The position numbers were made by a program, and so were the translations under genes. A model generated the notes under the pieces. The model did not search any database, was not told the origin of the DNA, and saw only the letters and a list, made by a program, of their open reading frames with translations. This document shows positions 11,131 to 13,146 of a DNA stretch of 32,000 nucleotides, in pieces (the first letter of the stretch is position 1; every line of letters begins with the position of its first letter). The stretch covers positions 270,001 to 302,000 of the forward strand of contig NW_008806283.1 in the NCBI RefSeq assembly GCF_000400465.1. Reading direction: 5' to 3'. Source of the DNA: Wallemia ichthyophaga EXF-994 (Eukaryota; Fungi; Basidiomycota).

Positions 11131-12462
11131 TTAGTCAAAGAAACATTCGAGCTTTCTCTCAAATTCTCTACCTGCATCTCTGTCAGCTTTCTTGAGGCTC
11201 TTGATTTTATGTCTCTGACGTCTATTGCTGCACATAAACAAAGGTCTATATTTGTTAGACCATAATACGAGGCGATTGACATAGCAGTTAACGTCGACGT
11301 TGACAATACGGAGATCGTGAAAGGGCGACAGGGCATTAGATGACGAAGCTCTGTCCCTGTTGTTTTGGTCCACCTGCGCGGCCGCATACGCCTTGCATTG
11401 GTTTGAGTCGCACAGCTTGAGCTGCTCCACATACTCATAGCCCTCTTTTGGGGCGACGCTAAATTCTCTCCTCTTCGCATCATCATCTACTGCCCGTAAG
11501 TAGCAGCTCTTGAGGTTATAGTGGCAGATGGAACATTTCTTGACGGTATGCGAGTCGTTCGAGACTAGGACAACATCAATACTGCGCTCGATGAGGGAAT
11601 TCACGATGGCGTGTCCCTAAAATAGATTTCAAGTCAGAAATCAAGGCACCGCATGAAACAAAACAACCCCACCTTCCCCTTCATCATGCTGTCGCCGACA
11701 ACAATGATGAGTTGCTTGGAGCTGGCTACGGGCCTATATGTTTTCTCTAATTTTCTCGCAAAGTCCTCGAGTGGACTGCCTAGATCGAACTTAGTTTTCT
11801 CGGTGATGTATGCACTGCTAGAGTAGAAGGAGCGCAGAATAGAGCTCTCGTAGTTAATTATACTCATATACAGCTCAGGACTTCTCAGACCAAGCTCTTC
11901 AGCTTCAATAGTCGCTATTCTGTCCTCACTAGCCTTCACCTTGTCAGACTTCATCCGCTCGATACGCTTCTCAAATGCCATCCTTCTCGTCTTCTTGGAG
12001 AGAGAAAACTTAAACTTTTCGGAACGGTTACGTGGATTGCTGTTTTCTGAACCCCCTACTATGCTGTCGGAGGCCTCATTCAAATGCAGGCTCACTGCAA
12101 AGTAATTGCCACGAACCTCAAACGCGACATCTTCTAATCTAAAAAGTGACATAGTTTGAAAGAAGATCGAGACTTTTTTACATGGTGCATGGCGGAAGTT
12201 GTGCTTTCAGGTACAGCACAGCGGAACGGTGAGGTTTGAGGGGTGCCGTAAGGTGTCTGAGGGGAATTTGAGAAGAGTTTGAAATGGCGCGTAGGAAATC
12301 ATGTAAAGAAATGTATATTAAGACAGTAACGGCATAAGTTACGTCCCGTCCAGCAGACAAACGATGACCCGGTTGTGTTGATTCAGTCGAAACGAATTTT
12401 ATAGAGAGCAATGAGTGCTTTGAGCACACTTCTTTCGCTGTCAAGTGCTTTGTACTGCGCAT
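11131..12462 (-). CDS. Intron-containing Fanzor/TnpB-like protein (split RuvC + zinc finger); 5' end uncertain
   Basis: ORFs 12178-12462, 11634-12152 and 11131-11604 join in frame via introns 12181-12139 (43 nt, GTAAAA..TTTTAG) and 11672-11617 (56 nt, GTGGGG..CTGAC..TTTTAG). Spliced protein: ...VAFEVRGNYFAV...LRSFYSS...KFD...FARKL...IIVVGDSMMKGK|GHAIVNSLIERSIDVVLVSNDSHTVKKCSIC...LKLCDSNQC...VNVDVNCYVN...RPLFMC. This follows the remembered Fanzor C-terminal order (viaxG...kg...vvlvdExxTSxxCxxC...CxxxxC...nRDxNaaxN...RPxf). Confidence 0.72.
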
Positions 12463-13146
12463 TCATTACGTCAGTCTTCTGGTTGAGCTGTTCTGTCTCG
12501 AGACGCAGTTGCCTCATATCACCCTCGATTTGTTTGCATTTCTAGATTGATATGCTGTTAGACTCGCAATGCAATGCGTCGTCCTTCCTCAGCATATCTA
12601 GCTCGGGCTTCTGCACCTAGATTGAGAGATTTTTTAATGCCACACGTTCCTGAAAGATAAACTGCCTTCATCAGTTGCCTCCACTGGCGAATCTGACCAT
12701 GACGTTTACAGATTGAGAATTTTTGTGAGTATCTGCGTTTGTGTCTATCTCTTCAATTTCCTCCACTTCCTCCAGCTTGTTTAGCCTATGATGTCGGGTG
12801 TAAGCCTTGATGGATGTGAAAACACCTTCATCTGACAGTTTTTATTGTGCTGATTCCCGAGTAGGGGATGTGTGAGAGGAGATACGAGCCAGTGATGGTG
12901 GAAAAATTATGGCATCTTTTGATTATGAAGGTTAAAAGAGCAATTATTTGCAGCTATCACAGGATCTCTTATAACGCTTCCTTGACTTAAAAAAAAAAAT
13001 TGAGACACACATACTGCAAAAACTTCATTTACAAGATGCAAACATCCTCAGCAACACAACTAACACAAATAACACAAAATAACGCTTAACAAGGTCATAT
13101 ATAATCATTCCCGATCACTCATAAATACTTCCCAAACAATCCCCCA

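What the first reader, a model, noticed from the sequence alone, without database searches (positions are those of the whole stretch)
11131..12462. Hidden spliced Fanzor/TnpB-like RNA-guided nuclease gene in a compact fungal genome
Seen in sequence: three short, apparently unrelated ORFs are joined in frame by two canonical introns (12181-12139 and 11672-11617) into a protein of roughly 400 aa. It ends IIVVGDSMMKGKGHAIVNSLIERSIDVVLVSNDSHTVKKCSIC...CDSNQC...VNVDVNCYVN...RPLFM. Established knowledge: Fanzors (eukaryotic TnpB relatives, OMEGA nucleases) end with a helical bridge segment, a viaxG..kg segment, RuvC-II vdExxTS directly followed by a CxxC...CxxxxC zinc finger, and RuvC-III nRDxNaaxN...RP; some carry introns and NLSs. 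A basic tail, RRQRHKIKSLKK, could be an NLS. Inference: this is a Fanzor1-like gene, spliced and open across its C-terminal lobes, placed singly between housekeeping genes. I know of no description of one in this lineage but could not search.
Basis: partly seen in the sequence, partly recalled or inferred. Interest (0 to 1): 0.92.

Follow-up and report, generated by a model that had tools for sequence, protein, structure and literature searches.

The report
Domesticated half-Fanzor gene in Wallemia
A single-copy, conserved gene of the salt-loving fungus Wallemia ichthyophaga looks like the nuclease half of a Fanzor1 transposon enzyme that lost its guide-RNA and target-binding half, so it is probably a transposon gene recruited by the host and not a working RNA-guided nuclease.

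Summary
The window is Wallemia ichthyophaga. The gene is J056_000567, annotated "uncharacterized protein". The true product is 321 aa: exon 12152-11673, intron 11672-11617, exon 11616-11131. The proposed upstream exon and first intron fail, because that "intron" contains the conserved start codon.

Standard searches find nothing outside Wallemia (Pfam, PDB sequences, 1.84 billion representatives). A targeted test against real Fanzor1 (Fz1) proteins is positive:
- hhalign P 1.6e-5, and 8e-6 against fungal Fz1.
- Fz1 HMM scores 12-18 bits; 0 of 500 shuffles reach this.
- An independent AlphaFold model gives an RNase H-like fold, and Cas12 and giant-virus TnpB-like proteins are its best matches.

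The match covers only the RuvC+TNB (NUC) lobe. The roughly 300-aa REC/WED lobe is absent. So are inverted repeats, extra copies and a conserved ωRNA-like flank.

SpuFz1 E541 corresponds to Asp181 and D606 to Asp268. The RuvC-I aspartate is unresolved; it is Asn39 in the favoured alignment.

The gene is syntenic in two relatives, and dN/dS is about 0.1 in the one comparison where dS is not saturated.

Best reading: a domesticated, NUC-lobe-only Fz1 derivative. I found no published description of one.

The parts
11673..12152 (-). Coding exon 1 (residues 1-160), start ATG at 12152
   Evidence: ORF; spliced translation; start Met and the following codons are conserved in L001 and L002 with synonymous changes; identical to annotated EOR00757.1.
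11617..11672 (-). Intron, 56 nt, phase 0, GTGGGG...CTGAC...TTTTAG
   Evidence: orthologues have an intron at the same position (55 and 216 nt). The reading frame changes across it in L001. The NCBI gene model uses the same junction.
11131..11616 (-). Coding exon 2 (residues 161-321 plus stop codon 11131-11133)
   Evidence: Best of 729 six-frame segments of the window against the Fz1 HMM, E 5e-4.
12024..12104 (-). Residues 17-43, YFAVSLHLNEASDSIVGGSENSNPRNR: likely last WED-like hairpin plus the RuvC-I strand. Candidates for the RuvC-I acidic residue are N39 (Asp in L002), invariant E36, or H23.
   Evidence: AF2 strands 17-25, 30-37 and 46-50. Low-confidence hhalign pairs SNPRNR with IDPNKRD and AVSLHL with SVSxxL. 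MAFFT disagrees here. This segment alone is not significant.
11946..12017 (-). Residues 46-69, KFKFSLSKKTRRMAFEKRIERMKS: strand beta-3 plus a basic helix, nearly invariant (21 of 24 residues) in the four Wallemia sequences
   Evidence: Near-invariant block. Aligned to Fz1 RYTSNQR..SRRFAKERQRMK.
11685..11714 (-). Residues 147-156, QLIIVVGDSM: strand beta-4 plus a GD/GE motif, equivalent to Fz1 VxxGDWS
   Evidence: hhalign. G153 is a nearly invariant column across Wallemia plus 21 Fz1. Segment Q91-160 alone gives P 1.4e-3.
11524..11577 (-). Residues 174-191, DVVLVSNDSHTVKKCSIC: strand beta-5, Asp181 at the position of SpuFz1 catalytic E541, and the first CxxC of the TNB zinc finger
   Evidence: One orthologue hits NCBIfam NF040570 guided_TnpB here, E 0.14. 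Segment Q161-242 alone gives P 2.3e-3.
11395..11412 (-). Residues 229-234, CDSNQC: second cysteine pair of the zinc finger, equivalent to Fz1 CxNxxC
   Evidence: C229 and C234 are nearly invariant columns in A6; hhalign.
11269..11310 (-). Residues 263-276, RIVNVDVNCYVNRL: RuvC-III-like motif with Asp268 at the position of SpuFz1 D606 (RxWNRDxLxTxNML)
   Evidence: MAFFT A6 has N266 and N274 as nearly invariant columns. Extended hhalign. D606 lies in WNRD. Not significant as an isolated segment. HMMER instead paired NRD at residues 246-248.
11188..11226 (-). Residues 291-303, NRRQRHKIKSLKK: basic tail, possibly a nuclear localisation signal or a nucleic-acid contact
   Evidence: Sequence; conserved in L001 as NRRQRQKIKSFKK. 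The function is inferred only.
12192..12245 (-).
   Evidence: 87% identical to L002 and present in L001 with a 4-nt indel. Unique in the window. No conserved secondary structure.

Best explanation
The gene (W. ichthyophaga J056_000567; 321 aa; two exons) is a host-domesticated remnant of a fungal Fanzor1 (TnpB-superfamily) gene. It keeps only the NUC lobe.

Shown:
- Retained parts: possibly the last WED-like hairpin, the RuvC RNase H-like core with its basic helix, the four-cysteine TNB zinc finger, the RuvC-III-like helix, and a basic tail.
- Missing parts: the REC lobe (REC plus most of WED), transposon ends and an adjacent ωRNA-like flank.
- It sits at a fixed, syntenic, single-copy locus and evolves under purifying selection.

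Inferred:
- It can no longer be programmed by an ωRNA in the canonical Fanzor way.
- It works in the nucleus as a nucleic-acid-binding protein through the RuvC/TNB surface and the basic helix.
- Two of the three metal-binding positions still carry carboxylates (Asp181 for E541, Asp268 for D606). The first is Asn39 in W. ichthyophaga and Asp in one relative, with invariant Glu36 nearby.
- So either a weakened or altered Mg-dependent nuclease activity survives, or the site now only binds substrate. I put roughly even odds on these two.
- Any target choice must come from the protein itself or from a partner.
For: Homology to Fz1:
- hhalign of the Wallemia alignment against 21 Fz1 gives P 1.6e-5, probability 79%, score 47.4.
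- 60 column shuffles give mean 17.7, SD 3.5, maximum 29.3; the reversed alignment scores 21.4.
- Against fungal Fz1 only: P 8e-6 over 178 columns (Q44-242). Against the algal Fz1 subgroup: P 0.09.
- Two non-overlapping segments each hit colinear Fz1 regions, P 1.4e-3 and 2.3e-3.
- The Fz1 HMM scores the four Wallemia sequences (three lineages) at 12-18 bits, in one colinear stretch of about 165-225 residues. 0 of 500 shuffles per sequence reach this.
- The same HMM ranks the gene's two exons first and second among 729 six-frame segments of the window.
- MAFFT aligns them colinearly, with shared near-invariant E76, Y110, G153, C188, C191, L226, C229, C234, N266 and N274.

Independent of any Fz1 input:
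- The AF2 model has beta-beta-beta, helices, beta-alpha-beta topology.
- Its top PDB hit is a Cas12 (8iew, E 4e-3, probability 0.96), with other Cas12 and RNase H-fold proteins below.
- Top viral hits are 440-650-aa giant-virus proteins, one of them annotated 'Transposase' (which I read as TnpB/Fanzor-like), and a Cas12f1-like TNB protein.
- NCBIfam guided_TnpB hits the zinc-finger start in one orthologue.

Catalytic mapping: D383, E541 and D606 lie in IDPN, LDEYKTS and WNRD.

Loss of the REC lobe: Met1 aligns near Fz1 column 293. No other Fz1-like segment is in the window. A separate conserved gene lies upstream.

Domestication:
- dN/dS is 0.10 with dS about 2.
- Synteny with NMT and with the downstream gene.
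- One copy, no terminal repeats, no conserved 3' flank and no Rfam hit.
Against: - The homology is remote. Pfam, PDB sequences and HMMER over 1.84 billion representatives find nothing outside Wallemia.
- The Wallemia HMM against single Fz1 proteins is not significant.
- hhalign probability is only 79-84%.
- The N-terminal 90 and C-terminal 80 residues, which hold RuvC-I and RuvC-III, are not significant on their own.
- The RuvC-I alignment differs between methods.
- AF2 confidence is low: mean pLDDT 59, and the C-terminal half is below 50 without Fz1 sequences.
- The model that matches Fanzor structures best was built with Fz1 sequences in its alignment, so it is not an independent test.
- Only three lineages are available, one of them truncated.
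- No expression or biochemical data were available.
Confidence: 0.7

Rival explanations
1. One reading: a functional, intron-bearing Fanzor1 OMEGA nuclease that uses an ωRNA to cut DNA, present as a single copy.
For: Fz1-type motifs and the zinc finger are present and conserved. Carboxylates are kept at the E541 and D606 positions. In Fz1 the RuvC/TNB surface binds ωRNA stem-loop 1 (PMC11423790), and that surface is retained.
Against: - No REC lobe: the protein starts near Fz1 column 293, and no Fz1 N-terminal similarity exists anywhere in the window.
- The N-terminal Fz1 profile search returned no Wallemia protein.
- No terminal repeats, no extra copy, no conserved 3' flank, no Rfam family.
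- The position is syntenic in three lineages.
- The first exon and intron of the model are refuted.
Confidence: 0.05
2. Not Fanzor-derived: a Wallemia-specific orphan protein with an RNase H-like fold and a zinc ribbon, whose motif resemblance to Fz1 is chance or convergence.
For: - No hit in any large unbiased search.
- The reverse profile-to-sequence search is not significant.
- hhalign probability is below 90%.
- Foldseek E-values are only 1e-3 to 1e-4 with TM about 0.2-0.3.
- ParM, EndoV and RT RNase H also appear among the fold hits.
Against: - Several different tests all point to the TnpB/Cas12/Fanzor clade.
- They are colinear over about 165-225 residues.
- Shuffled controls never approach the real scores.
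- The match is specific to fungal Fz1.
- Genuine SpuFz1 is itself invisible to this Pfam copy, so the Pfam negative carries no weight.
Confidence: 0.13
3. Derived from another branch of the TnpB superfamily (Fanzor2, a giant-virus TnpB-like 'transposase', or a short viral TNB-domain protein) rather than from fungal Fanzor1, possibly acquired from a virus already in truncated form.
For: Without Fz1 input, the best fold hits are Cas12 and giant-virus proteins. These include a 301-aa baculovirus 'Cas12f1-like TNB domain-containing protein' of similar size.
Against: - The glutamate position in the xDExxTS motif, GDW-type beta-4, FYxxPxH and RxWNRD...GRP are Fz1 signatures, and they align.
- The profile match is to fungal Fz1 and not to the algal subgroup.
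- I did not build Fz2 or bacterial TnpB profiles, so this rival is weakened but not excluded.
Confidence: 0.08

Closest known systems
Fanzor1 of fungi (SpuFz1 of Spizellomyces punctatus, PpFz1 of Parasitella parasitica; PDB 9ceu, 9cf0, 9cf1)
   Same: - Colinear RuvC + TNB lobe: beta-3/basic helix (RYTSNQR..RRFAKERQRMK against KFKFSLSKKTRRMAFEKRIERMK), FYxxPxH, GD after beta-4, xD[ED]xxT..CxxC, CxNxxC, RxxNxDxxxxxNxL, RP.
- Variable insertion before the RuvC-III motif, as in several Fz1.
- Fungal host and an intron in the gene.
   Different: - 321 aa against 600-700 aa; no REC lobe.
- E541 is Asp. D383 is probably Asn or unresolved. The loop before beta-3 is shortened.
- No terminal repeats, no ωRNA-like flank, single syntenic copy under purifying selection.
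- Sequence identity is only about 15-22%.
Bacterial TnpB and Cas12f (e.g. PDB 8h1j; NCBIfam NF040570 guided_TnpB; Pfam PF07282 Cas12f1-like TNB)
   Same: RNase H-like RuvC core interrupted by a zinc-ribbon TNB domain. There is a weak NF040570 hit at the zinc-finger start in one orthologue, and Cas12 proteins are the top fold hits.
   Different: The canonical RuvC-II glutamate after beta-4 is replaced by the Fz1-type arrangement. No WED/REC domains and no guide RNA locus. Eukaryotic, with an intron.
TldR (TnpB-like nuclease-dead repressors) and other exapted TnpB/Cas12 (Cas12c/m, Cas12k)
   Same: A TnpB-family gene recruited to a host function, with changes at catalytic positions.
   Different: - Those keep WED/REC and a guide RNA and lose the nuclease. 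This one keeps the nuclease lobe and loses the guide- and target-binding lobe.
- All described cases are prokaryotic. The reviews I read (PMC13565253) list only Cas12 and TldR.
Short viral TNB-domain proteins (e.g. UniProt Q8JMD4, 301 aa, Mamestra configurata NPV-B)
   Same: Similar size, and a fold hit at E 0.04. Apparently a TnpB-like fragment outside a transposon.
   Different: Only a weak structural hit; I did not compare the sequences. Viral, not a conserved cellular gene.

Membership tests
Fanzor1 (Fz1) | Significant sequence-profile similarity to the Fz1 family | tested here: met
   For the NUC lobe only. hhalign P 1.6e-5 and 8e-6. Shuffled controls reach at most 29 against 47. Fz1 HMM scores 12-18 bits, and 0 of 500 shuffles per sequence reach this. 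The similarity is remote and would not survive a database-wide correction.
Fanzor1 (Fz1) | RuvC RNase H-like fold | tested here: met
   The AF2 model made without Fz1 sequences has beta-beta-beta, helices, beta-alpha-beta topology (pLDDT 70-92 over residues 17-175). Its best hits are Cas12 and giant-virus TnpB-like proteins. Overall confidence is low.
Fanzor1 (Fz1) | RuvC-I aspartate (SpuFz1 D383, motif IDPN) | tested here: inconclusive
   The alignment is ambiguous: N39 (Asp in L002) by hhalign, a gap by MAFFT, H23 by AF2 strand order. Invariant E36 lies at the end of the strand. No Asp sits at any candidate position in W. ichthyophaga.
Fanzor1 (Fz1) | Fz1-type RuvC-II glutamate in xDExxTS (SpuFz1 E541) | tested here: not met
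   Asp181 (ND-x-HT) in all four Wallemia sequences. The change is conservative and keeps a carboxylate.
Fanzor1 (Fz1) | RuvC-III aspartate (SpuFz1 D606, motif WNRD) | tested here: met
   Asp268 in RIVNVDVNCYVNRL; N266 and N274 are shared near-invariant columns. The motif match is visual and colinear, and not significant alone.
Fanzor1 (Fz1) | TNB zinc finger CxxC...CxxxxC inserted between RuvC-II and RuvC-III | tested here: met
   C188, C191, C229 and C234 are conserved and aligned to the Fz1 cysteines.
Fanzor1 (Fz1) | REC lobe (REC + WED) that holds the guide and reads the TAM | tested here: not met
   Met1 aligns near Fz1 column 293 of 637. No Fz1 N-terminal similarity in any frame of the window. 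A separate conserved gene lies upstream. The N-terminal Fz1 profile found no Wallemia protein.
Fanzor1 (Fz1) | ωRNA encoded at or after the 3' end of the gene | tested here: not met
   No conserved sequence in about 800 nt downstream between the window and L001. No Rfam family in the window. Small-RNA sequencing was not available.
Fanzor1 (Fz1) | Residence in a transposon (terminal repeats, multiple copies) | tested here: not met
   No flanking inverted or direct repeats beyond chance. One copy in the window. Same neighbours in relatives. Whole-genome copy number could not be tested.
Fanzor1 (Fz1) | RNA-guided DNA cleavage | not testable with these tools
   Needs biochemistry.
TldR-type domesticated TnpB | Retains WED/REC and an adjacent guide RNA, with RuvC inactivated or truncated; bacterial | tested here: not met
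   The opposite architecture: NUC lobe kept, REC lobe lost, no guide-like flank. Eukaryotic.

The most novel reading that the evidence does not exclude
This is the first exapted Fanzor of a eukaryote: a NUC-lobe-only protein that is still an active RuvC nuclease, or an RNA-associated factor using the retained stem-loop-1-binding RuvC/TNB surface. It would serve a host function in Wallemia, with targeting supplied in trans by a partner protein or RNA.
Probability: 0.25. Interest if true: 0.8.

Novelty: new variant of a known kind. Interest (0 to 1): 0.6.

Why it matters
Every described domestication of TnpB-family nucleases (Cas12, TldR, Cas12k, sigma-factor-associated Cas12f) is prokaryotic and keeps the RNA-guided targeting half. 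A eukaryotic host gene that kept only the RuvC/TNB cutting half of a Fanzor1, under purifying selection across a fungal genus, would be a different route of exaptation. It would also offer a natural minimal NUC lobe for studying what that lobe does without REC/WED.

The case also shows that Fanzor relatives can hide among 'hypothetical proteins'. Standard domain searches miss them: in the Pfam copy used here, genuine SpuFz1 gets no hit at all.

The claim rests on remote homology and needs structural or biochemical confirmation.

Tried and rejected
- Pfam-A on both gene models: no hit at E<=10. This is uninformative, because SpuFz1 P0005 also gets none.
- PDB sequence search, single sequence and profile: nothing relevant. 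One E 0.23 hit to phosphoribosyl-AMP cyclohydrolase was judged chance.
- Protein database searches with the full protein and with the C-terminal half: only Wallemia-type sequences.
- HMMER over 1.84 billion representatives: only the orthologue fragments.
- Two metagenome scans for more orthologues: none.
The read-through tails of P0002 and P0003 pollute alignment A2.
- Wallemia HMM against single Fz1 proteins: not significant.
- Isolated N-terminal and C-terminal segments against Fz1: not significant.
- The upstream conserved element as a structured or guide-like RNA: no conserved fold and no covariation; rejected.
- NRD at residues 246-248 as the RuvC-III motif (HMMER's choice): rejected. That stretch is variable and carries an indel in L001, whereas RIVNVDVNCYVNRL is invariant apart from one V/I change and aligns in both hhalign and MAFFT.
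- The second AF2 model with Fz1 sequences in its alignment, and its Fanzor top hits, are kept only as a consistency check.
- Literature: no paper combines Wallemia and Fanzor, and none names J056_000567. No eukaryotic domesticated Fanzor turned up.
Full report
**Organism and locus.** The window is from Wallemia ichthyophaga, a halophilic basidiomycete with a compact genome. The spliced product of the gene is identical to EOR00757.1 / J056_000567 of strain EXF-994, annotated 'uncharacterized protein'. Neighbouring genes are housekeeping: N-myristoyltransferase, a class II aminoacyl-tRNA synthetase, an Atg4-type peptidase, adenylosuccinate synthetase, a DPP-IV-type peptidase, threonine dehydratase and a fatty-acid desaturase.

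**Checking the observation.** Joining them gives an open 410-aa frame containing every quoted motif. Only the second intron survives comparison.

I recovered two orthologous loci:
- L001, a Logan contig, 72% protein identity.
- L002, an ENA metagenome scaffold, 56% identity, cut by the contig end.

Both have an intron at exactly the position of 11672-11617. It is phase 0, 55 and 216 nt long, has a CTGAC branch site, and has coding conservation on both sides. In L001 the reading frame shifts across it.

The first residues MSLFRL are conserved as MSLYRL and MTLRRL through synonymous codon changes.

Its only conserved stretch is a 54-nt DNA element with a 4-nt indel in L001. Its 5' part overlaps, in another frame, the conserved last exon of the upstream coiled-coil gene.

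The gene is therefore exon 12152-11673, intron 11672-11617, exon 11616-11131, giving 321 aa.

**Unbiased searches find nothing.**
- Pfam-A gives no family at E<=10.
- PDB sequences give none, and with a profile only one chance-level hit.
- The 5.8-billion-protein index returns only W. ichthyophaga alleles and the exon-wise ORF calls of L001 and L002.
- A profile HMMER scan of 1.84 billion representatives returns only those same fragments.
- Two metagenome scans added no orthologue.

At the sequence level this is a Wallemia-restricted orphan. The Pfam negative carries no weight, because genuine SpuFz1 (P0005) also gets no Pfam hit in this copy.

**Evidence obtained without any Fanzor input.** An AlphaFold2 model from Wallemia sequences only has low overall confidence (mean pLDDT 59), but reaches 70-92 over residues 17-175. 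Its topology is:
- strands 17-25, 30-37 and 46-50;
- a helical block 53-139;
- strand 147-152, helix 159-170, strand 174-181.

This is an RNase H-like arrangement with a helical insertion.

Foldseek against the PDB ranks a Cas12 first (8iew, E 4e-3, probability 0.96). Two more Cas12 proteins and other RNase H-fold proteins follow. Against predicted viral structures the best hits are 440-650-aa giant-virus proteins, one of them annotated 'Transposase' (probability 0.97-1.0, E 2e-4 to 4e-3), and a 'Cas12f1-like TNB domain-containing protein'. I read these giant-virus proteins as TnpB/Fanzor-like from their size and that annotation. NCBIfam's guided_TnpB model weakly hits residues 177-205 of the L002 orthologue at model positions 333-355 of 389, the start of the zinc finger (E 0.14). 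Each result is weak, but all point to the same clade.

**Targeted test against real Fanzor1.** I took N-terminal Fz1 fragments from Supplementary Table 5 of Saito et al. 2023 (PMC10432273). With them I retrieved 73 Fz1 proteins and aligned 21 full-length ones (A5).

Profile-profile comparison with the four-sequence Wallemia alignment:

| Test | Result |
|---|---|
| hhalign, Wallemia vs 21 Fz1 | probability 79%, P 1.6e-5, score 47.4 |
| Same, relaxed settings | colinear over Q3-323 vs Fz1 columns 293-634 |
| 60 column-shuffled queries | mean 17.7, SD 3.5, max 29.3 |
| Reversed query | 21.4 |
| Segment Q91-160 alone | P 1.4e-3, colinear region |
| Segment Q161-242 alone | P 2.3e-3, colinear region |
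| First 90 and last 80 residues alone | not significant |
| vs fungal/chytrid-type Fz1 only | P 8e-6, 178 columns, Q44-242 |
| vs GtFz1-like algal subgroup | P 0.09 |

An HMM of the 21 Fz1 scores the four Wallemia proteins at 12-18 bits, in a single colinear stretch of about 165-225 residues. Per-sequence E-values are 4e-8 to 2e-6, and 0 of 500 shuffles each reach these scores. Among 729 six-frame segments of the window it ranks exon 2 first (E 5e-4) and exon 1 second.

MAFFT also aligns the families colinearly. Shared near-invariant columns are E76, Y110, G153, C188, C191, L226, C229, C234, N266 and N274.

The reverse search, Wallemia HMM against single Fz1 proteins, is not significant. The relationship is remote. 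I put homology at about 85%.

**Motif map.** P0006 (SPPG_07727, 638 aa) carries D383 and N385 in IDPN, E541 in LDEYKTS and D606 in WNRD. D383, E541 and D606 are the published catalytic residues of SpuFz1, and N385 is a fourth metal ligand (PMC10432273; PMC11423790).

| Wallemia residues | Wallemia sequence | Fz1 equivalent |
|---|---|---|
| 46-69 | KFKFSLSKKTRRMAFEKRIERMKS | RYTSNQR...SRRFAKERQRMK |
| around 110 | FYSSSAY..EK | FYxxPxHxxxK |
| 151-156 | VVGDSM (GES in the two other lineages) | VxxGDWS |
| 178-191 | VSNDSHTVKKCSIC | LxDExxTSxxCPxC |
| 229-234 | CDSNQC | CxNxxC |
| 263-276 | RIVNVDVNCYVNRL | RxWNRDxLxTxNML |
| 283-287 | YRPLF | GRPxxF |

So E541 corresponds to Asp181 and D606 to Asp268. 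Several Fz1 also carry a variable insertion before the WNRD motif, as Wallemia does.

The RuvC-I position is unresolved:
- hhalign pairs SNPRNR (SDPRAR in L002) with IDPNKRD, which would make it Asn39 in W. ichthyophaga and Asp in L002.
- MAFFT leaves a gap there.
- The AF2 strand order would suggest His23.
- Glu36 at the strand end is invariant.

**What is missing.** Met1 aligns near column 293 of the Fz1 alignment. At most the last WED-like hairpin is retained (FEV..YFAVSLHL against FDGxIxTDGxSVSxxL). The REC domain and most of WED are absent.

According to Xu et al. 2024 (PMC11423790), the REC lobe clamps the TAM duplex and positions the guide. The NUC lobe (RuvC+TNB) carries the active site and binds ωRNA stem-loop 1.

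Further absences:
- No other frame of the window resembles the Fz1 N-terminal half.
- A distinct conserved gene lies directly upstream.
- The N-terminal Fz1 profile found no Wallemia protein.
- No terminal inverted or direct repeats beyond chance and no second copy.
- No conserved 3' flank and no Rfam family.

**Selection and synteny.** Between the window and L001, dN is 0.20 and dS about 2.0, so dN/dS is about 0.10. Against L002, synonymous sites are saturated. L002 has the N-myristoyltransferase gene upstream in the same order and orientation. L001 has the same downstream neighbour. This is a fixed host gene under purifying selection, not a decaying insertion.

**Interpretation.** The best-supported account is a domesticated fungal Fanzor1 reduced to its NUC lobe.

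Shown: the gene model, conservation, synteny, absence of the REC lobe and of transposon features, statistically supported similarity of residues about 44-242 to fungal Fz1, and an RNase H-like fold.

Inferred: the protein binds nucleic acid through the RuvC/TNB surface and the near-invariant basic helix. The basic tail NRRQRHKIKSLKK may direct it to the nucleus. It cannot use an ωRNA in the canonical way.

Whether it still cuts is open. Two carboxylates are in place and a third acidic residue is nearby. However, the favoured alignment gives Asn at the RuvC-I position in this species.

Rivals:
- A working RNA-guided Fanzor: about 5%.
- A chance or convergent resemblance: about 13%.
- Descent from another TnpB branch or a virus: about 8%.

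**Novelty.** I found no paper linking Wallemia and Fanzor, none naming this locus tag, and no description of a domesticated eukaryotic Fanzor. A 2026 review lists only Cas12 and TldR as domesticated forms. The known exaptations keep the guide-binding half and often lose catalysis. This one does the reverse. I rate it a new variant of a known kind, of moderate to high interest, limited by the remoteness of the homology.

**Caveats.**
- Only three lineages are available, and one is truncated before RuvC-III.
- The AF2 models have low confidence.
- The model whose top hits are the PpFz1 and SpuFz1 structures (E 1.5e-4 to 5.8e-4) was built with Fz1 sequences in its alignment. It is only a consistency check.
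- Whole-genome copy number, expression and activity could not be tested.

Noticed in passing
window 12192-12245 (-): A 54-nt non-coding element about 40 nt upstream of the start codon. It is 87% identical to the L002 orthologous locus although synonymous sites of the gene are saturated, and it is present in L001 with a 4-nt indel. It is unique in the window and has no conserved secondary structure. Probably a cis-regulatory site.
   Followed up: partly
window 12178-12183 (-); L001 about 1210-1215: A minimal start-stop upstream ORF (ATG TAA) lies between the conserved element and the main ATG. L001 has ATG TGA at the aligned position. This may be translational control.
   Followed up: no
window 11672 (-), exon 1/intron boundary: The real intron has a non-consensus 5' splice site, GTGGGG. 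The orthologues have GTTAGT and GTGAGT, preceded by four extra codons (FARK). W. ichthyophaga therefore appears to have lost 12 nt and shifted to a weaker donor site.
   Followed up: partly
window about 12383-12541 (-) and further upstream: A small coiled-coil gene lies between N-myristoyltransferase and the Fanzor-like gene. Its last exon is conserved in L001 (36% identity, E 7e-10), but it has no Pfam family and is poorly conserved in L002.
   Followed up: partly
protein P0005 (SpuFz1, SPPG_09423): A genuine, experimentally characterised Fanzor1 family member gets no Pfam-A hit at E<=0.01 in this library copy. Only the GtFz1-like Fz1 proteins hit PF07282. Domain-based annotation will therefore miss fungal Fz1 and its derivatives.
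   Followed up: yes
BFVD hit Q8JMD4: A 301-aa baculovirus 'Cas12f1-like TNB domain-containing protein' is a weak fold match (E 0.04) of similar size. It suggests that short TnpB-like proteins without a REC lobe may exist elsewhere.
   Followed up: no
cluster of P0001: W. ichthyophaga strains carry at least two alleles of this protein, differing at 6 of 321 residues (R14L, E85D, D174N, N194T, E221D, N253T). None of these touches the proposed metal-binding or cysteine positions.
   Followed up: no
window 12020-12033 and 12222-12235: The core of the upstream element (ACCGTTCCG) recurs inside the coding region at the codons for PRNRSE, as a 14-nt direct repeat at 86% identity. Probably chance.
   Followed up: no
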